Positions 12,278-23,600 of a stretch of 64,000 nucleotides of DNA are shown in pieces (the first letter of the stretch is position 1; the number at the start of each line of letters is the position of its first letter). The stretch is from Auanema rhodensis (lineage: Eukaryota > Animalia > Nematoda). The stretch covers positions 12,524,001 to 12,588,000 of the forward strand of contig OZ059897.1 of NCBI GenBank assembly GCA_964057225.1. Reading direction: 5' to 3'. Position numbers and translations under genes: made by a program. The notes under the pieces were generated by a model. The model had not been told where the DNA came from. It did not search any database and saw nothing but the letters and a program-made list of their open reading frames with translations.

Positions 12278-15200
12278 TTAATAACGATATAACTTAGCCT
12301 GTTCTCGATTGGCTGAAGTTCGATGTTCTCCACCTAATGTGTAGTAGGCAGATGGGTCATTTGGATAAGATACGTATGGTTGCGTTGACGGTGGGCGGGT
12401 TGATGATGGTGGAGGAACACCAGGCAGGGTTTCCTCGTGCTGTTGCGATTTAGAGCCAACCTGGAACAAACAGATTTTTTGTTGTTGTCTATATGGTTGT
12501 CATCTTCTTTTATTTTATTTTCTATTTATGTCTTTACTACTCTCCACTTTTTTGCCAATCTATCGTTTCCTCCCCCCTTTTACTTTTTTCTCTCTTCTAC
12601 TTCTCTGCTACTTCTTCCTTTCGCTAATTTTCTAGTCTTTGGACCACAATCAATATTCTCAGCTATTTTTCGTTCTTAGAGATAAATGGAATAGGAGATG
12701 CCAAAGAGCAGAGAGAAAATCCTGATGTGTAGCGCTTTTTTGCCGGTGGCCTTATTCCTCAGTAGTAATTTATTTATTTTAAGTGTTGTTTGTTATGATA
12801 GTTTTTAGTTCAAATGTAAAAATCTCACCTTAGTATACCATTCGTGATATGTTGTTTCTCCTACTCCATCTGGAATTCCTTCTTGTTCTACTCCTGGTGG
12901 ACTTGGCTGGCCACTAGGCTTTGTTGAAGCAGTTGTAGTTTGTGAGTAATGTCGATGATAAGCGGCATTATCAAAACCCAATGGTGCTTTCTTCATTCCC
13001 ACTAAATAATGATAATTCTTGATTGTCCGGACGGTTTGCAAATGAAAAAAAAAAGAAAGAAAAAGCAATAACTCACTCGTTCCATATGGATAATTGGGTG
13101 GTGGAATAATTGGGTATGAACTCTGGAAATGAAAGAATAAATTGATTTGAAGGTAATACCAAACATACATAACGTCTTGAAGATCTACACTTGCAAATTA
13201 AACAGCATGTACAAGCAATAGCCAAAATAAGAAGAATTGAAGCACTTCCGATGATGACGATGTTACGTAAGAGGTCGGGAGACATAGAAGCTTCCATGAT
13301 TGGATTTTCTGAAAAAAAATTTATTTGGTATATATTAAGTTACATTTGCTTGGTTTCTATAAAATAAACAGAAAATTTGATAACTTACCAATTTCTTTAG
13401 CTTTCACAGTGCTTGCCTCGATAGCTAAGTCGCCAATCTTTCCACGAATAGCATTCTCTTCTAATAAGCTCTTAATTTCAATTGGACGAGGTACAGACTT
13501 AGTTGAGAGAACCTGAAAAAAAGAAAAACCATTTAGATTCAACTATTTTAGTATGTTTTACTTCAAACTCAGCGATAACGGATCCCTTTGAGTATTCGAA
13601 GATCTTGGATACCTGCATTCCCTTCCATCTTTTATCGAGCATACCATTGATCTGGAGAAAACAAATTACTTAACACGAAAACAAGTTTTTTCAAACTTAC
13701 AGCTGAGGAGACTTGTTTAGTGAAGCTCTGATAGTATTCCGTTTGAGGATCAGCAAGAGCTGGGATATATTCGCGATTAAGAATACGCACCCAGAGACGG
13801 TAGCGAGATTTAACTGGTTCAGTAGGTTCGTAAACAGTGTAAGCTGAAACAAGAATTGTATCAGAAGTCGTTACATTCGATGACGTCAAATTACCTGGTT
13901 TCTTAATAAGAGGTGGCATCTGAACTGTTGGCTTAATAAATGGAACATTGGATGAGTCAACAGGTTCATTAGGAAGACTGGTTGTAGTAGTGACTGGCTT
14001 CTTCTTTTCTGGAGTCTTCTCAGCAATCTTTTCGGTAACTTTCTCAACTGTAGTCTGGGTGGTTGGTGGAGCAGAGGTTTCTGTAGTTGTGGTGGATGTC
14101 TGTCCAACAGTTGTGAGAGTTTTATCAACAGAGCAAGTTCCCAAGCAGATCTGAATAGATAAACTTGAAAAGTGTGGATTTAGAATATTATATTTCTACC
14201 TTGTTATTGCTTACAACAGGTGTATCAGCATGCTTACGTAATTCGCCATTCTTCTCAATAATTCCAGAACTTGGAGTATATAGAAGATATACACACTTTT
14301 GAAGATTAATATCATCTTTATCTTCACTGAATAATTCACGAGAGAAGTTAGCAATGAGAATTCCTTCATTATATAATGTCTGAAAATTAATTAATTCAAT
14401 TATTCCATATATATTAAAAAAAAAAAAACTTCAAAAAACATACCTCAACATCAAAAATATCTTGCTGTTCATCAACAACTGGTCTACCGTAATGAGGCAT
14501 GAACTGATCAGTTACTGTAGCTAGCCCATCTTGACTTCCCATGATGATAACATCAGATTGAGCCATGCTTCCATCGATGGAGAATCCAAGTGCAGACCAT
14601 TCGTTTTCATTGAGAGAAGTTTTAACTGTGAATCGAGCAGTGGTTCCATCACTCATCCAAGATATAACGTATGAGCACTCTTCACCCTTACATCCATCAG
14701 GATGAGAATAGGTTCCAGTGCAAGTTGATTGTGTAACATGAATTCCATGCTCGGTTGGCTCAACCTTCTTATCTATAAATGAACAACTTTAATTGGTATT
14801 CTTCAACTTATAATTTACCTTCGAAGAAGTCAATACTTAATACTCCACGTTGATTCTTTCCGTGATATTTGAAAAATCCTGGGGCAAAGAAGTTTGGATC
14901 AGCCTGAATAGCTGGGCCTCCAGTAGTATGTTGGTAATTTTCAGGATCAGCTCCCTTAGACCAAATAACTGTCATAGGTCCAGGTGTGATGGAGTGATCA
15001 TACTTATCCGAGCCTAGAATGCTCACAATGATTCTGCTAATTTCAGTTGATGTTTCTTACTCTTTAATTTTCTTCTGAACACAACAGTTGTGATTCCATC
15101 TTCATAGAAGGCAGCAGAAGATTCTAACGTATCTTCTCCACCAAAGAAACTGTCAGGTCTTGGAGTAGCCTTGCTTGGAGAGTAGAAGTCTTTTACACGT

Positions 15201-18200
15201 CCACGTCCATCAACAACAGCTCCAACAACCATGTCCGTACATTCCATAGCATTACCTAAGATATATAACATAGTAAATCATGTTAATATATCAACAATAT
15301 TATTAGAAGTTAATACTTAATTCAAATTTAATTTTTCACGTAATCTACACTTGCAAACTATTTTAATATCATTTTCATCTATGTTGCTGATGCAAACGGT
15401 TGTTCTCTCTTCGTTTTCGCGCTTTGGAAGCTTAATTGATATTATTTCCTAATCTAATAAAATTTTTTCGAGCATATCAAGAAAATTTGTCATACTCCGC
15501 ACTTTTATCAGTTTTCTATGAAACGTTTCAGCATAAATAAATTGAAGCTTACCACGTTTAGGATTTGGTGGCTGGACAGCAGCTTGTCTACGGACTCTGA
15601 CCCGAATCGGCGCCTTATCAGTGGTTATTGATACTCCTTTTTCATCACAGAGACAGATCTTGTTGGTGCTAACGCGTGGCTGGTACAAATCATGATAACC
15701 TGCAAACATCCTCGATCGTACTTAATGAGACCTCTTTGAAACACTGGTTAAAATTTCGAGAAAAGATTCTTATCAAAGTACTTTCGATGTACATGAGGAT
15801 ATTCCAAGAATTTTGAAATCAAATCTAATCAGCTAACCAATGGCACGAAAGATGGTACGAAAAATTAAAAAAAAGGGGAAATTAACGTTTTTCGTTATTT
15901 ATTTAACAAAAAAAACTTACCGATTGGAGTACGTGGATTAGTGAAGTCGCTGCTCTTCTTAGCAATTACACGCCCACCACCAATTGGATACATGAAATAA
16001 TAGCATTCATCAAGTGGGAAATCAGTCAAAGGATCAGAAGTTATAACTTTTCTCTTGAAGGATATTGTCTAAAAATACTGATTTAGAAACAGAGCTGCCT
16101 AAAGCATTTGAACCTGCATGTCTTCAATCATTGAACCACCGATATCATAGATATCTTGACGATCAGCTGGATCAATTGCAGGAAGTTGTCGTCCATAAGC
16201 AAAACGATCAGTTACAAATGCTTTATTTTCATAAACCCATCCGGTGTATATGTCACTGTTGGCCATTTGTCCATCTCTGAAATAGTCATGAAAATTATGA
16301 ATTCAAACTATTATCTTCATACTTAGAGAATCCAATTCCAGTCCATCTTCCCATATTTCTGCTAGAAATATTGAATTGAACTTCCTTGTTATCAGAAATA
16401 TATTTCCATCTAGCAATGTACTCGCATTCAGAATCTTGACAGTCAAGAGGATATCTATATTCTGTTTCGCATTTAGCTTGATTGCCAGCTGAAATTTATT
16501 TTTGAGATATGAGAGGTTTTTAAATTATTTTCTTACAGTTCACAGGCTTCTTGTCTTCATTGCAGTTACGGATACATACTTGTCTATCGGATACAAGAGG
16601 AGTGTCAGAATGAATTGTGACGTTTCCACTCTGTTAACATATTATTTTAAAATTAAATTCATTTCTATAAGTACTTACCTCATCGAGTTTACCACCAGAA
16701 ACTGGGAACATGAGCTTCCAGCATTCAGATGAGAATTGCTTGTCGGCTTCATCTCCAGTATCACGTTTGCGGATGAATTGAGCACGAAGAAGCCCATTCT
16801 CATGTGTTCCAACAACAGAGGTAACATCATTCTTTTCGTCAAGTTTTGGAGCTCCATATCCTTCACTGGTCATATCGTGAACAGATAATACTCCGTTGAA
16901 GGATTTGACAATAATCATATCAGCTCCCACCATAGTTCCATCAGCACTAAATCCGACACCGGTCCATGAGTTAACATCCATCTTAGTTTCCAAAGAGAAT
17001 TCAATCTCATCAGAGTCTTCAACATAATTCCAATTCAACTTATACTGACAATCTAATTGGCATCCAGCGGGGAAACGGAATTCTCCATAACAAACATCTC
17101 CATCAACTTTAGGCTTGAGCTCACGTTTAGGAGTTGTTCGTGTAGCTGTAGTAGTAGTTACAGCAGGCTTTGATGTTGTAGTAGGAGAATCTAATTCACA
17201 ATCTCCCCAGTAGACACAGATTCCTTGAGAGTTTCTGGCATACCCTTGCAAGCAAGCACAACCTGGTTCTGAACACTTGGTACATTCATCTCGGGTGAAA
17301 ATTGTTTGACAATCAGCTTCACATAAGTTTCCACATTCGTTGATTGTTTCGTTAACAGCACAAGTTAATGGAACAATAGGTACAGATTTGGAGTGAGATG
17401 TGGTCATGGTGGTTGGAATAGTAGTTGTGCTTTCAGCTCGGACTTCTACAGTAACTGGCTGAGAACTCTTAACAACTTCAGTGGATGCTTCGGATTCATC
17501 ATTGTGGAAGTGAGTTTCCAAATCAGGACAATCTCCCCAATAGATGCATTGTCCATTGTGGCGAACATAGTTATCAGCACAAGTACAATCAGGCTTTTCA
17601 CAACTAGCTGGGCATGGAGCAGTGTCATACATGTTGGCACAGCTAGGTTCGCAAGCTGTTCCACACTTAGCAAAAGTAGAGTTAGCAGGACATGAAGGCT
17701 CTTGCTAAAAATTTATATTTTAATAATTGTATTTATTTATTTCAAAGTTATACCTCTTTATCGCAAAAATCGAATGGTACGCAAGCATCTTCCTCATTTG
17801 TCATACGGACGTAACCTTCTTTGCAAATACATCTTGGGGTTCCACATTGTCTTGGACAGTTTGGAATAGTCTCTGGGAAACGAGTCCAATCACATGAAGC
17901 TTCACAATCACGAGAAGTTTCAGCACATTCAGTCCAAACTTCATTTGGTCCACATTGCTCACCTATAGATAAATTAAATAATAAACAAGTTATATATACG
18001 GTATGGTACCACTATCTTTGGTTTCATGTTCGATAGCTGATTGGACTACGGTATTATTATTTTGGAAAACATGATGTTCAGGAACCTTGATTTCGATTTT
18101 CTTGAGATGAGCTTTAGCTGGAACGATATGAGCATGATATGTTATGTTTATAAATAAACATACGATCTTCCTGTGGAATCATGCTTTCACAAACATAATC

Positions 18201-20657
18201 AACTGGCTTAAACCCAATAGCAGCCCAGGATTGTCCAGGATAGCGTAAAACCATTTCAATTTCGTTCTGAAAATCCGATCTCTGTTATCAAAAACTTTTT
18301 TTTGAATTGTAAGCTATACACTTACTCTTAGAATTCTCCAAAAAATCTTATTATCTTTAGCTTCTCTCATATTATACAGAGACTCGTCAAAATCAGACAA
18401 AGAACGGAAAACGGTTGATTCTAAAATGATGTTTTCAGTTAATTTGTGTTCTGTTTAGTTGACTGTTAACCTTTTTCACAACGTACTCCATGTCGTTCAC
18501 TTGGGCAATAGCATTGTGTTCTTGGATCATCAGCATTCTTCTTGCAAACTCCTTGAACTCCACAATCATCATTTGAAGTACATTCTTCTATAAATAGATG
18601 TTTCGTTATTTATTGCTAATTTCCAATTCTTTCATTATTTGTTATTCAAAAAACAAATGACTAACCAGCATATTGACATTGGCTACCAGAATATCCACTA
18701 TCACAAATGCATTTTCCGCCAATTCTTTTACCTCGTGTAAGACATGAATCACCATCGGGAATTGCTGCAATTTAGATATTTGTCATCAGTTTCATTTAAC
18801 ATGTTTCAACTTTACAAATAGTTTGTTAAAAGTTTTTTTCATTTTATACGAACAGCATATTTGCTCTAAAGATATTTTTCATTTTAATGCTAACGTTCGA
18901 CAGATGTAAAGCGTAATATCAGGGTACAGAAGTGGTTGAACAAGAAGGGAAGAGAGGGAGGGGGGTGGTGGCTGCTAAAATGACCGACCCAAATTTGACA
19001 ACACTTTCTATCGTCGTTCAACACCATGTATAATGTCTTAGGTCAAGAAAATTTCGTTTATTGTTCAAATTCTCTTGGTACATAGCCAGCCGATGACTAG
19101 ACACGCTTTTGGCGTTGTCTTTTACAAAAAAACGACATCGTTCAAGTTTTTGACGACACAGTCTTCATCATAGACGACGTCTGTGGTCAGCGCTCATAAT
19201 GCTGTTCACTCCAGTAATTGTCATTGACCATAAAATCATATAAAATTGCATTTGTTCTTTTGAATACATGTATCAAATAGAAAAAAAGGTGATTCTATGC
19301 ATTCAATAGCTTAATTTTGCAAAAAAACAGTTGGAAAAACTTTTGAAAAATCACGATAGAGTCACATAAAAATCATTATATTGGGTGAAATTATGTTTTT
19401 GAGGAAGATTTGTAGTATTTTTATGAATAATTTTAGTTCAAGTTGTATTTTTTGAAGTGTTAATCTATAATACCTTTAACGATATTGACATCAGCACAAC
19501 TGTAGAAAAAGTATTCTTCACCATATTCGGTAGCTTGATGAGTCAAACGAATGGCACAGTTCATACACTCAAAATGAGCTGGTAACTCAACAGTTTTAGA
19601 TGATTGTCTGAAGGTAATTCCATAAAAATTTTTTAAAATATCTGAAAAGTTCTTACGTGATATTGTATTCATCACGGAAATTGGCAAATATAGCAATAGG
19701 CTCATCCAAAGCATTCAATACTTCCAATCGGATTCCTCCCTAAAATAGTAAATATGATCATAACTCCTATTCATTGATTTATTAGAGTTACATAACTCAT
19801 AAGTTTCATAGTTTGATTATATAACAATTTATTATTAGTTGGTTGATTTAAGATCTTTATGAGATTTAAGTAATAAGAGACCAACGATATAGTAACGGCC
19901 TCCAGAATAACCTTGGCCTATGAGGGAGAGCTAAGCCTAACTAGTTGCGGAATAGATCAGAGATAAAGATAGATAAAGATAGTTAACATTGTCTCTTTAT
20001 ACTATTCTTTTGGTATATAAACTAACTATTATAAAGAGCATTTTTTGGATATTTTATAGACATTCATATAGTTGATACGTCATATGTAACTAATAAATGA
20101 AAATTTGAAAACGAATAAAGAAATATTTGAAAAAATTATTTTAATTAAATAAATTAAAAATTTTATTTGGGTCTTAATTAGTAAAATAACTTACCATATG
20201 TGGAATTGCTGTAAACCATTCGATATCAACAATTGAACCAGATTCCAAGAATGTTCGGACACCTAGAACAATGCTTTAAAGAAAAATTAAATTTTTTTTT
20301 CCATAGATTTGACCAAAAGATTGAAAAATTACAATACTTATGCAATAATTTCTTGAATAGAACATATAATTTATTTTTTTCTCAAATGTTATAAGGTCAT
20401 CTTCAATAGAAGAAGTAAAACTTAAAGAAAGAATGAATACTATTTTCTTTGAAAAAGAAGAAAAATCTGATGAATCTTCAGAGATACTTACCATCATTGG
20501 CACCGGGCTTAGGTAGACCACATGCTCCTTGAGAGTTGTGATTAGAAAAATAATCAAGAGAAGGTGAACGAGCTGCTGGATAAGTTAATCGAACATGACT
20601 ATATGCTTGAGCTATTAATAGCAATAAGAGAAATGGTAATGAGAGCCTCCACGGCAT
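12278..20657 (-). CDS. Type I membrane protein, ~1,700 aa: signal peptide, His-brace LPMO-like domain, 2xEGF, split DOMON enclosing 3xTIL and 2xDOMON, a fourth DOMON, S/T-rich stalk, SEA, TM and cytoplasmic tail
   Basis: ATG at 20657 directly follows a TTCCAG acceptor. N-terminus MPWRLSLPFLLLLLIAQAYS|HVRLTYPAAR; EGF CICDSGYSGSQC; TIL CGPNEVWTEC, CPANSTFAKCGTACEPSC and CAVNETINEC. DOMON cores WTGVGFSADGTMVGAD, WTGIGFSKDGQMANSD, WSALGFSIDGSMAQSD, and WAAIGFKP...AMECTD. SEA with KGSVIAEF; TM IVIIGSASILLILAIACTCCLI; stop taken from ORF 12278-12469. The last exon is less certain. From memory it resembles C. elegans C09F9.2 (unverified). Confidence 0.9.
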
Positions 20658-23600
20658 CTGGAATTATTTTTTAGTTTAACAAACTGAATAATAAACATTT
20701 AAAAAGATAAGAAACAATCATTTATCACTTAGAAATCAGCACTTAAATCACGAAAAAAACACTTAAGGATGAAAATTGTTCTAAGTTTCCTATAATGGAA
20801 GTTCAGGTTTAAAGTGCTAAACACAAATATTTTGGAACTTCTATTGATGAATAATGAAAAAAAAAGGAAAAAAAATTGTTTGAAGGTGATTAAGTTTAGA
20901 ATACTTGTTGTCATTATTAAAATTATAGATATGTAAGTAAGAATGGTTAACTTTTAAATATATTTTTATGGTAAATAAAATAGTTTTGAGAAGTTTTTTT
21001 AAATAAAAAAGAAAGAAAAGAAAATATCTTAAAAGCTTTTGGTATAAGAATAAGAAAAAAACAGGAATACTATTTTGAAACATGCAAAGTTATAGGAAGG
21101 ATTTCGAAAACATTTAGGGATTTAATAATTTCTTTTGTTTGTTATTGAATTGGGAAGGATGATGAAGACATACTAGCAGTTTATAGGAGGATATACTATG
21201 AATCTGTGAACAGATCCATAATAGGTAGTATAGTAAAATTGAAAATGACCATAAACTATATGTATATAGATAGATAGATATATGCTAGTAGTAATTGTCG
21301 TTTTGTATCAAAATCTAGTATATATTACACAATCGTATAACTTCAAATATTAAAATTTATATGATTGTACATATATGTACTGAAATAATTATAAATAAGT
21401 CTCAAAGCACAATATGAGTTTCATGTTAAAGGAGAGAATCGGACAATTCTTACCGATCAGAATGATCTCATGTGGACGTGGAGATGAGGTTAGAAGGGAG
21501 GGAAGAGATAGTCCGAGGTCTCGAAGAAACAAACTGAGGAAGACTTGCGCAAGCATTTTATCAAGGACGCGAGAAGATAGAAGTAATAGATAAAAGCGGA
21601 AGATGAGAGAGTAAAGTAGAGGTTATGATGATGATGGTGGTTACCCTGATCCTATAAGATTTGAGGAATATGAGCATTTAAAGAAAATCTCAATAATTTG
21701 CAAGGATAAACAGAGAAGAGTACTATGAAAAGTTAAAGGAACATGGCATGAAAGAAGAAATAAAAATGAAATGATTATTTCGATTCAAAATTATGAGCAA
21801 TAGACTAATAGATTTTAGAAGAAGCAAATGAGGTAGTCGGGATCAGCTTCGCTCCACCCATGATAATTTAAAATTTAATTAGCTTTTCCTTTAAAAAAAG
21901 TTTTAAAAAAGTCTTATAAAATTATTGATAATTAGATAATTATAAGAAGAAAAAATGAATATACATAGACATATCCTCATATAAAAAGAGATAAAATGAT
22001 AAAAGTACGCGATTGCATTGATGATTATCTGAGAGAACATATCGTTCATTCATCAAACACTAATCACTACTAATTATCAACGACATCTGGCTAAATCTGT
22101 CAGAAATTTCAGGAAGATGAAAAGAAAAACGGTGATGATGGACAGTAAACCGGACAGGAATTGTATAGTTAATGATAACACTAAGAAAATAACTATAAAC
22201 TGATTGAGGAAAATAGAATACAAGCCCTTAAGCATAATTATTCTGAATAAAAATACTTGACGATAGAAATTCTCGAAATGTGCTTCTTATACTGGCGGAA
22301 CTGATTTCATACAGAAGATACAATAAGAAGTTCCAGTATATACGCTGAAAGTTTTTGAAAGCCAAACAAACTGAAGTGAACAAGACATCATTAGAACAAT
22401 TCCATCAACATCCTCATCATATTTCAAAGTTTTTTTTCTTTTGAATGAAAGTAGATAATTACTTTAACTACACAACGTAAATTGTTAACTTTTAAGTTTT
22501 GACATGTACCAACAAATAAGATAATTATATTTTAAAAGAGAAGGTCTATGAGATGATTTGTATTATGCTTAACTAATTATATATTTTATTTTCTGTTTGA
22601 TCTGTTTGAAAAAAAACAAAGCTCATGCAAAAGCTGTCTTAAAGAAAAAAAATTTGTTAAGAAAAAAATAAAAAATAAAAAATTGCAATATTTCATGTAG
22701 TTCTTCGTGTCTATCTTACCTCACTCTTCCACTTTCTGTAACCGTTTAAGTCAAAAATAAGAGGTGGATTAAGAACCGTCTTTACAATAGAAATCTGCCG
22801 ATCGGTAAAAGACAAAAGATTTTGCATTTTTTAGAAAGCGAGAACCATTTATCCTAACTATCTATTCTTTTAATCTTGAAGAGCCTCGTCCTTTTTTACA
22901 CGAACAACGGTTTGACAGGTTTAGATTAGAAAAACCGGGAAAGTCTCAAGATCGGCAAACTATATATTTATCGGATTTACTTGTCAAGATAACTAAACCT
23001 ATTAAATATAGCATCTCATAAATGACCTTATCTGGCTTTCATCAAGTTCCTATTTCCCATGGGGACTGTTGATGCCTTTAATATCATATTACTACTATAT
23101 GGTTATAAATAGTTAATAAGTAGAATTGTCTTGATTTATAACTATCTTCAGATATATTTTTCAAGAGAGAAAAAGTTATAATGAAAAAAGATAAAGAAGG
23201 GAAAAATGGAGAAAACATGGTAAAGAAGTCTTCGAAATGACGAATAGAAGGTCAAGGCTTCAAATCTTTATGGGATACAACATGACTGAGATAACATGAA
23301 TTTAAATAGGAGAGCTTTAAAATCGTTTCAAAACAGAAAAAAATAATTTTCAGATATCTTTTTCATCCTATTACATCTCTTACAATTAAAATATTTGGAT
23401 CATCTTCATACGATATCATTTCTTACCAACAACCAAAAAATTGGAAAATAAAAGAATAATTTCAATATCGTTATGGTTAGTTGTTAAAGTTTAAATGCAT
23501 ATCTTCTTTAATTATATGTCTATTGCTATTAAAGAATATTCACAAAGCTTTTCTATTCTAAAAATTTCACATCTTTTCACAATAGTTGTATAAAGGACAT

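What the first reader, a model, noticed from the sequence alone, without database searches (positions are those of the whole stretch)
19474..20597. Hidden histidine-brace (LPMO-like) copper domain heading a multi-DOMON membrane protein: a one-chain LPMO plus cytochrome system in a nematode
Seen, split over 4 small exons and largely invisible in the ORF track: the signal peptide ends A-Y-S, so mature residue 1 is His (codon 20595-20597). The domain reads HVRLTYPAAR...GACG...IEWFTAIPHMGGIRLEV...VELPAHFECMNCAIRLTHQA...YFFYSCADVNI. Known: LPMOs need His1 after signal cleavage and a second His (W..TAxH in AA10, TANHxG in AA15), and AA15 enzymes have LPxxxxCxxCxL and a terminal FxxCADV carrying the axial Tyr/Phe. 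Fungal LPMOs are reduced by the DOMON-fold heme domain of cellobiose dehydrogenase. Inference: this gene fuses a minimal (~130 aa) His-brace domain to its own four heme-DOMON donors and anchors it at the cell surface. It could oxidatively remodel chitin, glycan or cuticle, or act as a Bim1/X325-like copper-handling protein. I am not aware of a functional characterisation of such a nematode protein.
Basis: partly seen in the sequence, partly recalled or inferred. Interest (0 to 1): 0.92.

Follow-up and report, generated by a model that had tools for sequence, protein, structure and literature searches.

The report
LPMO-like copper domain on DOMON protein
A nematode cell-surface protein, the counterpart of the unstudied fly gene nahoda and worm gene C09F9.2, begins with a small domain that has the fold and key residues of copper enzymes that cut chitin and cellulose, joined in one chain to four probable heme domains; nobody has tested what it does.

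Summary
Four minus-strand exons (20657-20492, 20262-20195, 19739-19657, 19607-19474) encode a 20-residue signal peptide and a 130-residue domain starting with His (codon 20597-20595). Transcript contigs from four RNA runs show exactly these junctions, with an SL1 leader joined just before the ATG.

The domain belongs to the LPMO (lytic polysaccharide monooxygenase) superfamily.
- An AlphaFold model of the 70%-identical Nippostrongylus orthologue (pLDDT 91.6) matches only LPMOs. The best is insect AA15 (5MSZ, Z 13.6, 129 of 132 residues, starting at His1); the X325 copper protein scores Z 10.9.
- A profile search aligns the second His with His91 and a Phe with the axial Tyr184 of that enzyme.
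- His1, His57, Phe120 and four Cys are kept in 96-99 of 99 distinct homologues from nematodes, arthropods, annelids and molluscs.
- His always directly follows a rule-compliant signal-peptide cleavage site.

The four DOMON domains keep a Met that aligns with the heme-ligand Met of cellobiose dehydrogenase, and a conserved C-terminal His.

Copper binding, heme binding and catalysis are all untested. Catalytic LPMO versus Bim1-like copper handling is unresolved, and the chain contains no primary electron source. The family is protostome-wide, not nematode-specific. One 2019 paper noted such sequences in passing.

The parts
20658..20663 (-). Trans-splice acceptor (ttccag) where the SL1 leader joins, directly before the start codon
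   Evidence: RNA contigs end at 20659 and continue with the 3' part of SL1; sequence
20598..20657 (-). Signal peptide, residues 1-20, ending A-Y-S
   Evidence: Residues -1 and -3 fit the cleavage rule here and in all 137 homologous N-termini
20492..20657 (-). Exon 1: signal peptide plus mature residues 1-35 (H-V-R-L-T-Y-P-A-A-R ... C-G)
   Evidence: GT donor at 20491; RNA joint; aligned by reference with 19 homologues, H1 P7 A9 R10 D15 C26 G27 invariant
20595..20597 (-). Codon of mature His1 (residue 21), the proposed N-terminal copper ligand
   Evidence: His in 98/99 distinct homologues. The structural alignments pair model residue 1 with the first residue of mature LPMOs
20195..20262 (-). 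Exon 2, ending with W-F-T-A-I-P-H-M
20198..20200 (-). Codon of mature His57 (residue 77), the proposed second histidine of the brace
   Evidence: Coordinates. The family His aligns with His91 of TdAA15A. Kept in 98/99
19657..19739 (-). Exon 3 (G-G-I-R-L-E-V-L ...)
19474..19607 (-). Exon 4: L-P-x4-C-x2-C, R-x-x-x-Q-A-x-E, Y-x-F-x-S-C-A-D
   Evidence: This exon was the query. Its Cys motifs align with TdAA15A
19505..19507 (-). Codon of mature Phe120 (residue 140), at the axial position of the copper site
   Evidence: Aligns with Tyr184 of TdAA15A; Phe in 96/99; coordinates
19526..19528 (-). Codon of mature Glu113 (residue 133), a near-invariant carboxylate in the loop before the last strand. It may be a second-sphere residue or a fourth copper ligand
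   Evidence: Glu 95/99 plus Asp 3/99. Loop position from the model's secondary structure. Role not resolved
18471..18764 (-). Two EGF-like exons (18764-18666, 18587-18471)
   Evidence: RNA joints; EGF Pfam hits on orthologues
14145..18406 (-). Three TIL domains and four DOMON domains. One DOMON is split: its N-part ends near 17958 and its C-part resumes near 15607. Each DOMON has a Met in G/N-x-M-x3-D and a His near its C-end
   Evidence: Pfam DOMON 2e-31 and TIL 1e-19; gene model; domain coordinates; Met/His conservation
13393..13823 (-). SEA domain, after a Ser/Thr-rich linker (14123-13836)
   Evidence: Pfam SEA is weak in the window (0.0034) and stronger in relatives (8e-7)
13193..13261 (-). 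Single transmembrane helix followed by basic residues (type I orientation)
   Evidence: A 23-residue hydrophobic stretch read directly from the sequence; no TM predictor was run
12281..13192 (-). Cytoplasmic tail (three exons) up to the TAA stop, with a conserved C-terminal motif
   Evidence: Collinear tblastn hits with three orthologues; gene model

Best explanation
Identity (about 0.9 likely). Window 20657-19474 (minus strand) encodes the signal peptide and the N-terminal 130-residue domain of an approximately 1,581-residue type I membrane protein. That protein is the orthologue of C. elegans C09F9.2 and of the insect protein named nahoda. The domain is a small member of the LPMO superfamily, closest in structure to AA15.

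Copper site (inferred, about 0.75). After signal-peptide cleavage, His becomes residue 1. Its free amine and side chain, together with His57, would hold one copper ion in a histidine brace, with Phe120 below it.

The rest of the ectodomain (shown by domain searches):
- two EGF-like modules
- three TIL modules
- four DOMON domains that keep the Met and His that bind b-heme in the cytochrome domain of cellobiose dehydrogenase
- a mucin-like linker and a SEA domain

Mechanism I commit to (inferred, about 0.4). The copper site is redox-active and is reduced by the neighbouring DOMON heme(s), as cellobiose dehydrogenase reduces fungal LPMOs. It then uses O2 or H2O2 to oxidise a component of the apical extracellular matrix. 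A chitin-type glycan is the most likely substrate, because the nearest structures are chitin-active and the confirmed hosts all come from chitin-making phyla.

The electrons must come from outside the chain, either a soluble reductant or a partner protein. The chain has no flavin or cytochrome b561 domain.
For: Gene and transcript:
- Exons, reading frame and splice sites.
- RNA contigs with exactly these joints and an SL1 leader.

Fold:
- AlphaFold2 model of P0140:18-149 (70% identical to the window's domain) has pLDDT 91.6.
- All 50 best Foldseek PDB matches are LPMOs or LaX325.
- VIA-align: 5MSZ TdAA15A Z 13.6, rmsd 2.7 A over 129/132 residues. Chitin-active AA10s score Z 12-12.7, with model residue 1 aligned to their first mature residue. 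LaX325 scores Z 10.9.

Sequence profiles:
- Family profile against PDB sequences: TdAA15A E=1.4e-5, pairing P-H with His91, C-x2-C with C-x2-C, and F-x-S-C-A-D with Y184-R-N-C-A-D.
- Pfam BIM1-like_dom hits start at the His and cover nearly the whole profile. P0074 (31.6 bits) and P0053 (27.2) exceed the 27-bit cut-off.
- Pfam LPMO_10 reaches up to 25.2 bits against a cut-off of 23. 18 and 17 of 45 members match LPMO_10 and BIM1-like respectively.
- NCBIfam 'SCE4755 family polysaccharide monooxygenase-like', E 1e-5 to 2e-11, in all 8 tested.

Conservation in 99 distinct complete domains:
- His1 98, His57 98, Phe120 96, four Cys 99, Arg10 99, Asp15 99.
- His is at +1 after G/A/S/C/T at -1 in 137/137.

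DOMON domains:
- Pfam 2e-31.
- AlphaFold2 pLDDT 91.9. Z 14.3 to the dopamine beta-hydroxylase DOMON and 12.2-12.4 to cellobiose dehydrogenase cytochrome domains.
- Invariant Met (20/20) aligns with Met74 of MtCDH, where dopamine beta-hydroxylase has Leu. A His is nearly invariant about 12 residues from the domain end.

Distribution: nematodes, insects, crustaceans, chelicerates, annelids and molluscs.
Against: - No metal, heme or activity data exist for any member.
- The model is of an orthologue, not of the window's own spliced product, which the tools could not take by reference.
- The nematode members fall below the curated Pfam cut-offs (21-22 bits for BIM1-like; no LPMO_10 hit for P0140 or P0003).
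- The domain is small. Between strand 1 and the core it has only a 35-residue loop, so a flat polysaccharide-binding surface is not evident.
- A near-invariant Glu113 could block the fourth copper position, as Asp does in X325. That would argue against catalysis.
- The chain lacks any primary electron source.
- In this species an alternative cleavage site (A-Q-A|Y-S) would leave His at position 3 and abolish the brace.
Confidence: 0.55

Rival explanations
1. The domain is an X325/Bim1-type copper-binding module and not an enzyme. It captures Cu(II) at the cell surface with a histidine brace plus a carboxylate (Glu113). The heme DOMON domains reduce it to Cu(I), and it passes the copper to a membrane importer or to secreted cuproenzymes.
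For: - The Pfam BIM1-like profile is the only one matched from the first residue over nearly its whole length. Two members exceed its curated cut-off.
- LaX325 is a clear structural match and is of similar size (Z 10.9, 121 residues aligned, chain 150 residues).
- Bim1 is also tethered to the cell surface, and X325 carries an Asp ligand on a flexible Gly-containing loop (PMC7529816; PMC10952591).
- This family has a near-invariant Glu in a Gly-containing loop just before the last strand.
- The domain is small and no extended binding surface is evident.
Against: - Structure and motifs are closer to AA15 and chitin-active AA10 (Z 13.6 and 12-12.7 against 10.9). The only significant PDB sequence hit is AA15.
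- The anchor is a transmembrane helix on a long stalk, not a GPI anchor.
- Whether Glu113 reaches the copper could not be measured.
- X325 was described in fungi, where no heme partner is attached.
Confidence: 0.3
2. The domain keeps the LPMO fold but binds no metal in vivo. It serves as a glycan- or protein-binding head of an apical extracellular-matrix receptor (EGF, SEA, transmembrane helix, conserved tail), and the DOMON domains bind sugars rather than heme.
For: - LPMOs were first described as chitin-binding proteins.
- DOMON domains include non-heme members, and the best DOMON sequence and fold match is the non-heme DOMON of dopamine beta-hydroxylase.
- The EGF/SEA/mucin/TM architecture is typical of matrix receptors.
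Against: - Near-total conservation of exactly the three copper-site positions, and of His at +1 of the signal-peptide cleavage site, across phyla. This is hard to explain without the metal site.
- All DOMON domains keep the Met that dopamine beta-hydroxylase lacks and cellobiose dehydrogenase uses for heme.
Confidence: 0.12
3. The four small exons are a chance alignment or a dead remnant, and the real protein starts further downstream.
For: None found. No protein with this N-terminus from the window's own genome appeared in the protein database search.
Against: - Spliced transcript contigs with an SL1 leader directly before ATG 20657 and 0 mismatches.
- The reading frame is open through 25 exons.
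- The gene is collinear with orthologues over its whole length.
Confidence: 0.01

Closest known systems
AA15 lytic polysaccharide monooxygenase (Thermobia domestica TdAA15A, PDB 5MSZ)
   Same: It is the best structural match (Z 13.6, rmsd 2.7 A, 129 of 132 residues, starting at residue 1 of both) and the only significant PDB sequence match (E 1.4e-5). Both have an N-terminal His, a second His in a P-H context (His91) and an aromatic residue at the axial position. Both carry the L-P-x4-C-x2-C and C-A-D motifs. Both come from animals.
   Different: Only 21% identical. 130 residues against 195, lacking much of the loop region. Phe replaces Tyr at the axial position. The residue two before the second His is bulky rather than Ala. 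It is fused to EGF, TIL, DOMON and SEA domains and a transmembrane helix instead of being a free secreted enzyme. Activity is untested.
Chitin-active AA10 LPMOs (CBP21 2BEM, EfCBM33A 4A02, JdLPMO10A 5AA7)
   Same: Same fold (Z 12.0-12.7), with model residue 1 aligned to their first mature residue. From my own knowledge, not tested here: the axial Phe is usual in AA10. JdLPMO10A (142 residues) shows that a domain this small can be active. Pfam LPMO_10 matches 18 of 45 family members.
   Different: 13-17% identity. Only the C-terminal half of the Pfam profile matches. The nematode members do not reach the Pfam cut-off. AA10s are bacterial and secreted.
X325 / Bim1 LPMO-like copper proteins (LaX325, PDB 6IBH; Pfam PF20238)
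   Same: Small size, histidine brace, and tethering to the cell surface. The Pfam profile matches from the His over nearly its whole length. Fold match Z 10.9. A conserved carboxylate lies in a loop near the site.
   Different: X325 is fungal, GPI-anchored, and has an Asp ligand whose equivalent could not be placed here. It has no attached DOMON domains. It is structurally more distant than AA15 and AA10.
Cellobiose dehydrogenase plus LPMO (fungal AA3-AA8 with AA9)
   Same: A DOMON-fold b-heme domain with Met/His ligands acts as electron donor to a histidine-brace copper centre. The window's DOMON domains match CDH cytochrome domains (Z 12.2-12.4), and their Met aligns with Met74 of MtCDH.
   Different: In fungi the donor and the LPMO are separate proteins, and the heme is fed by a flavin dehydrogenase domain. 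Here the copper domain and heme domains are in one membrane-anchored chain, and no dehydrogenase domain is present.
Drosophila nahoda and C. elegans C09F9.2 (orthologues)
   Same: Same family and architecture. C09F9.2 (P0188) has the same N-terminus, with His after the signal peptide. Insect proteins named nahoda share 38-43% identity in the N-domain.
   Different: The insect proteins show two DOMON matches and no TIL domains. Neither gene has a described function in the searched literature; both appear only in gene lists.
NCBIfam NF043005, SCE4755 family polysaccharide monooxygenase-like protein (bacterial)
   Same: It gives the best E-values of any library model (down to 2e-11), covering positions 20-146 of 146 in all eight members tested.
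   Different: Scores of 25-44 bits lie far below the 75-bit cut-off. That family is bacterial, stand-alone and itself uncharacterised.

Membership tests
LPMO superfamily (AA10/AA15 type) | LPMO beta-sandwich fold | tested here: met
   Model pLDDT 91.6. The top 50 PDB matches are all LPMO or LPMO-like. Z 13.6 to 5MSZ over 129/132 residues. The model is of a 70%-identical orthologue.
LPMO superfamily (AA10/AA15 type) | His as first residue of the mature protein, directly after the signal peptide | tested here: met
   The (-3,-1) rule is satisfied with His at +1 in the window (A-Y-S|H) and in 137/137 homologous N-termini. SignalP and protein sequencing were not available, and the window has an alternative site two residues upstream.
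LPMO superfamily (AA10/AA15 type) | Second conserved His completing the brace | tested here: met
   The family His aligns with His91 of TdAA15A. Kept in 98/99. Spatial adjacency could not be measured because no coordinates were available.
LPMO superfamily (AA10/AA15 type) | Aromatic residue (Tyr or Phe) at the axial position | tested here: met
   Phe120 aligns with Tyr184 of TdAA15A. Phe in 96/99.
LPMO superfamily (AA10/AA15 type) | Score above the curated Pfam LPMO_10 cut-off | tested here: inconclusive
   18/45 members match at E<0.01. A few exceed 23 bits (25.2, 23.8). The nematode members P0140 and P0003 do not match.
LPMO superfamily (AA10/AA15 type) | Binds one copper ion; cleaves polysaccharide oxidatively | not testable with these tools
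   Needs ICP-MS, EPR and product analysis.
X325 / BIM1-like (PF20238) | Score above the curated Pfam cut-off (27 bits) | tested here: inconclusive
   P0074 31.6 and P0053 27.2 bits pass. Nematode members score 21-22 bits.
X325 / BIM1-like (PF20238) | Carboxylate (Asp) as fourth equatorial copper ligand, on a flexible Gly-rich loop | tested here: inconclusive
   A near-invariant Glu113 lies in a Gly-containing loop before the last strand. Its distance to the site, and the position of the X325 Asp in an alignment, could not be obtained.
X325 / BIM1-like (PF20238) | GPI anchor | tested here: not met
   The domain sits at the N-terminus of a ~1,581-residue chain with a transmembrane helix and a 131-residue cytoplasmic tail.
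Heme-binding DOMON (cellobiose dehydrogenase cytochrome type, AA8) | DOMON fold | tested here: met
   Pfam DOMON 2e-31. Model pLDDT 91.9. Z 12.2-12.4 to CDH cytochrome domains.
Heme-binding DOMON (cellobiose dehydrogenase cytochrome type, AA8) | Met and His axial heme ligands | tested here: met
   Met is invariant in 20/20 DOMONs and aligns with Met74 of MtCDH, while dopamine beta-hydroxylase has Leu there. His is nearly invariant about 12 residues from the domain end. Its match to the CDH His is by my estimate of position only. All four window DOMONs have both residues. Heme itself is untested.
Cellobiose dehydrogenase | Flavin (GMC) dehydrogenase domain feeding the heme | tested here: not met
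   No such Pfam domain in the window's exons or in six full-length relatives.
NCBIfam NF043005 SCE4755 family | Score above the curated cut-off (75 bits) | tested here: not met
   25-44 bits in eight members. Related, not a member.

The most novel reading that the evidence does not exclude
Animals of the chitin-making phyla (nematodes, arthropods, annelids, molluscs) carry an ancient single-chain extracellular redox machine at the cell surface. It would consist of an AA15-like copper monooxygenase head wired to two to four b-heme DOMON domains on a membrane stalk. The hemes would reduce the copper within the chain, and the enzyme would oxidatively cut or modify chitin or another matrix glycan during eggshell, pharynx or cuticle formation. 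This would be the first natural fusion of an LPMO with its cytochrome donor and the first LPMO-type activity in nematodes.
Probability: 0.3. Interest if true: 0.85.

Novelty: new variant of a known kind. Interest (0 to 1): 0.72.

Why it matters
LPMOs changed how polysaccharide breakdown is understood, and in fungi they depend on a separate DOMON-fold cytochrome for electrons. In this conserved animal family the copper domain and the probable cytochromes sit in one membrane-anchored chain.

If the inferred chemistry holds, the family offers three things:
- a natural model for heme-to-copper electron transfer within one protein
- a candidate for oxidative remodelling of chitinous matrices, or for copper handling, in nematodes, where I found no report of an LPMO
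- a clear, testable function for genes that are still unnamed or unstudied in the two main invertebrate models (C09F9.2 and nahoda)

Because the family occurs in parasitic nematodes and insect pests and no vertebrate member appeared in the hit lists I could name, it may also interest people looking for control targets. That absence was not tested systematically.

Tried and rejected
- Pfam on the four single exons gave nothing useful; the pieces are too short.
- phmmer of exon 4 against PDB gave only a spurious LIM-domain hit.
- A profile of the N-terminal 45 residues against PDB gave nothing relevant.
- phmmer of the window's first complete DOMON against PDB gave nothing. A profile of 20 DOMONs was needed.
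- The window's own protein with this N-terminus did not appear in the protein database. I aligned exon pieces to a full-length orthologue to fish it out (A1), then dropped the idea, because would already have listed it.
- The spliced 130-residue product has no reference, so it could not be handed to the fold, family or PDB tools. I used the 70%-identical orthologue P0140:18-149 instead and aligned the window's sequence to the family in scripts.
- To decide between LPMO-type and X325-type copper sites I tried to locate the X325 Asp ligand. Three papers gave no residue numbers, the Bim1 paper is not held, and a stand-alone relative (P0299) did not hit LaX325 by sequence. Model coordinates are not exposed, so no distances could be measured.
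- Reeler, DM13 and other non-metal folds were considered. None appears among the top matches.
- A Trichinella 'DOMON domain-containing protein' that is up-regulated at moulting (PMC6757440) may or may not be an orthologue. This was not checked.
Full report
**1. What is in the sequence**

On the minus strand an ATG at 20657 opens a hydrophobic signal peptide that ends A-Y-S. The next codon (20597-20595) is His.

Four exons with GT..AG borders join in frame to give 150 residues:
- 20657-20492
- 20262-20195
- 19739-19657
- 19607-19474

When every GT/AG combination near these borders is scored by splice consensus and by similarity to five orthologues, these four junctions win clearly.

Transcript contigs of about 5.6 kb from four runs of one study lie on the stretch without a single mismatch. 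They skip exactly these introns (229, 455, 49 and 709 bases) and the next two. Beyond position 20659 the contigs continue with the last bases of the nematode SL1 spliced leader. The mRNA is therefore trans-spliced at the acceptor ttccag, and ATG 20657 is its first AUG.

It is not a chance pattern: the 44 residues of exon 4 alone retrieve 137 proteins at E<=0.001 from 1.84 billion.

**2. The whole gene**

The gene is collinear with orthologues from Nippostrongylus, Angiostrongylus and Caenorhabditis from 20657 down to 12281.

My model has 25 exons and about 1,581 residues, with no stop codon. A few internal junctions are approximate, for example 16140/16046.

Domain order:
1. signal peptide
2. 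the 130-residue N-domain
3. two EGF-like modules
4. the first half of a DOMON
5. three TIL modules
6. two complete DOMONs
7. the second half of the split DOMON
8. a fourth DOMON
9. a Ser/Thr-rich linker
10. a SEA domain
11. one transmembrane helix followed by basic residues
12. a 131-residue cytoplasmic tail

**3. What the N-domain is**

Single exons are too short for Pfam, so I worked through homologues.

*Library profiles.*
- On eight full N-domains, Pfam finds BIM1-like_dom (PF20238) in every one. The match starts at the His and covers almost the whole profile. Two members exceed the curated cut-off.
- Pfam also finds the C-terminal half of LPMO_10 (PF03067) in most, with two above its cut-off.
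- Of 45 members, 18 match LPMO_10 and 17 match BIM1-like at E<0.01.
- NCBIfam's 'SCE4755 family polysaccharide monooxygenase-like protein' matches all eight tested at E 1e-5 to 2e-11, below its cut-off.

*PDB sequence search.* A profile of the family searched against all PDB sequences gives one significant hit, the insect LPMO TdAA15A (5MSZ, E 1.4e-5). In that alignment:
- the family's P-H histidine pairs with His91
- L-P-x4-C-x2-C pairs with the same motif
- F-x-S-C-A-D pairs with Y184-R-N-C-A-D

From my own knowledge of the TdAA15A paper, His1, His91 and Tyr184 form its copper site.

*Structure.* An AlphaFold2 model of the Nippostrongylus orthologue's domain, which is 70% identical to the window's, has pLDDT 91.6.
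- All 50 best Foldseek matches in the PDB are LPMOs of families AA9, AA10, AA11, AA15 and AA16, or the LPMO-like LaX325.
- With VIA-align, TdAA15A is best (Z 13.6, rmsd 2.7 A, 129 of 132 residues, both starting at residue 1).
- Chitin-active AA10s follow at Z 12.0-12.7. Model residue 1 is aligned to their first mature residue.
- LaX325 scores Z 10.9.
- No Reeler or other non-metal fold appears.

**4. Conservation**

In 99 distinct complete N-domains:

| Position | Kept in |
|---|---|
| His1 | 98 |
| His57 | 98 |
| Phe120 | 96 |
| Four cysteines | 99 |
| Arg10 | 99 |
| Asp15 | 99 |
| Asp125 | 99 |
| Glu113 | 95 (plus 3 Asp) |
| Tyr118 | 93 |

In all 137 complete N-termini the first aligned residue is His. 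It is preceded by G, A, S, C or T at -1 and by a small or aliphatic residue at -3, which fits the signal-peptidase rule.

The window's exon 1, aligned by reference with 19 homologues including C. elegans C09F9.2, has every invariant residue.

In this species a second acceptable site (A-Q-A|Y-S) lies two residues upstream. His at +1 is therefore strongly suggested by the family, but not proven for this protein.

**5. The DOMON domains**

- Pfam finds DOMON at 2e-31, and weak matches to the cytochrome domain of cellobiose dehydrogenase.
- In an alignment of 20 DOMONs from nematode, insect, annelid and mollusc members, one Met is invariant and one His near the C-end is nearly invariant.
- A profile of this alignment hits the non-heme DOMON of dopamine beta-hydroxylase best (2e-12) and cellobiose dehydrogenases only weakly. 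However, the invariant Met pairs with Met74 of MtCDH, while dopamine beta-hydroxylase has Leu there. From my own knowledge, Met74 and His176 are the heme ligands of MtCDH.
- A model of the fourth DOMON (pLDDT 91.9) matches dopamine beta-hydroxylase (Z 14.3), four cellobiose dehydrogenase cytochrome domains and a pyranose dehydrogenase cytochrome (Z 12.2-12.4).
- All four DOMONs of the window carry both residues.

Heme binding is a reasonable inference, not a result.

**6. How it probably works**

*Shown:* a transcribed, trans-spliced gene; an LPMO-fold head with the three copper-site positions conserved; DOMON domains with heme-type ligands; a single-pass membrane anchor.

*Inferred:* copper is held by the amine and side chain of His1 and by His57; the DOMONs carry b-heme; electrons pass from heme to copper.

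I favour a redox-active copper centre acting on an extracellular matrix glycan, most likely chitin, for four reasons:
- the nearest structures are chitin-active enzymes
- the disulfide and motif pattern is that of AA15
- attached cytochrome-type domains make most sense for a site that cycles between Cu(II) and Cu(I)
- all phyla in which I could name members make chitin

The main rival is a Bim1/X325-type copper-handling role. It is supported by the full-length Pfam match, the small size and a conserved Glu in a loop next to the site. In X325 an Asp on a flexible loop closes the fourth copper position, and no polysaccharide activity was found (PMC7529816; PMC10952591). I could not decide between the two readings because the model's coordinates are not exposed.

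In either reading the chain has no flavin or cytochrome b561 domain. The first electrons must therefore come from a soluble reductant or a partner protein. 'One-chain system' is too strong.

**7. Comparison with what is known, and novelty**

*Named orthologues.*
- The C. elegans orthologue is C09F9.2 (NP_497053.1), annotated as uncharacterized. One paper mentions it, in a gene list.
- The insect orthologues are named nahoda, 'DOMON-like domain-containing protein nahoda'. In the library the name occurs only in gene lists.

*Literature searches.*
- Searches for histidine brace with DOMON, LPMO with DOMON domain, and AA15 with nematode found no study of this family.
- The exception is one sentence in Voshol et al. 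[quoted passage not shown]

*Traces in databases.*
- A Necator fragment is named 'Chitin-binding type-4 domain-containing protein'.
- A few lepidopteran entries carry a precomputed PF20238 hit.

The kind (LPMO-like histidine-brace domain) is known. The architecture, its animal-wide spread and its presence in nematodes are essentially undescribed. I rate it a new variant of a known kind.

**8. Earlier notes of this scan**

Two first-stage notes on the same window state that all four DOMONs keep the Met/His pair, and that one DOMON is split by a large insert. My alignments agree with both. I did not study the insert further.

**9. Limits**

- The fold was predicted for an orthologue, not for the window's own product.
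- No signal-peptide predictor or transmembrane predictor was available.
- Organism names are masked in the AlphaFold DB output. My impression that two of those hits are from a sponge and a placozoan rests only on my memory of accession prefixes and is not evidence.

Noticed in passing
window 20658-20663 (minus strand): The mRNA is trans-spliced to SL1 directly before the start codon. RNA contigs carry the end of the leader beyond 20659.
   Followed up: yes
window 18406-17958 and 15607-14744 (minus strand): One DOMON is split exactly in the loop that carries the candidate heme Met. About 610 residues (three TIL and two complete DOMON domains) lie between the halves. In insect relatives, a partial DOMON match (C-terminal part only) lies upstream of the one complete DOMON. 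This suggests a shorter insert at the same place.
   Followed up: partly
window 12460-12281 (minus strand): The cytoplasmic tail ends in a motif (Y-P-N-D-P-S-x-Y-Y-T-L-G-G-E-H-R) that is nearly identical in the Angiostrongylus orthologue. It may be a sorting or signalling motif.
   Followed up: no
window 13193-13220 (minus strand): There is a cysteine cluster at the cytoplasmic end of the transmembrane helix (C-T-C-C-L-I-C-K-C), a possible palmitoylation site.
   Followed up: no
P0279 and P0287: Short database fragments of the same N-domain from Necator and Trichostrongylus carry automatic names: 'Chitin-binding type-4 domain-containing protein' and 'Plastocyanin-like domain...'. The full-length orthologues are named only after their EGF or DOMON domains.
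   Followed up: no
P0299: A 177-residue stand-alone relative carries both LPMO_10 and BIM1-like Pfam hits. In the loop that holds Glu113 in this family, it has an Asp- and Gly-rich stretch. It could help place the X325-type ligand.
   Followed up: partly
window 16140/16046, 16679/16630 and 14844/14749 (minus strand): These internal splice junctions of my gene model are uncertain. Comparison with the orthologues suggests a few residues are missing in the second DOMON.
   Followed up: partly
AlphaFold DB hits: Family-like N-domains (TM 0.78-0.92) occur in entries whose organisms are masked. One further hit is a 'Copper acquisition factor BIM1-like domain-containing protein'. The family may reach beyond protostomes.
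   Followed up: no
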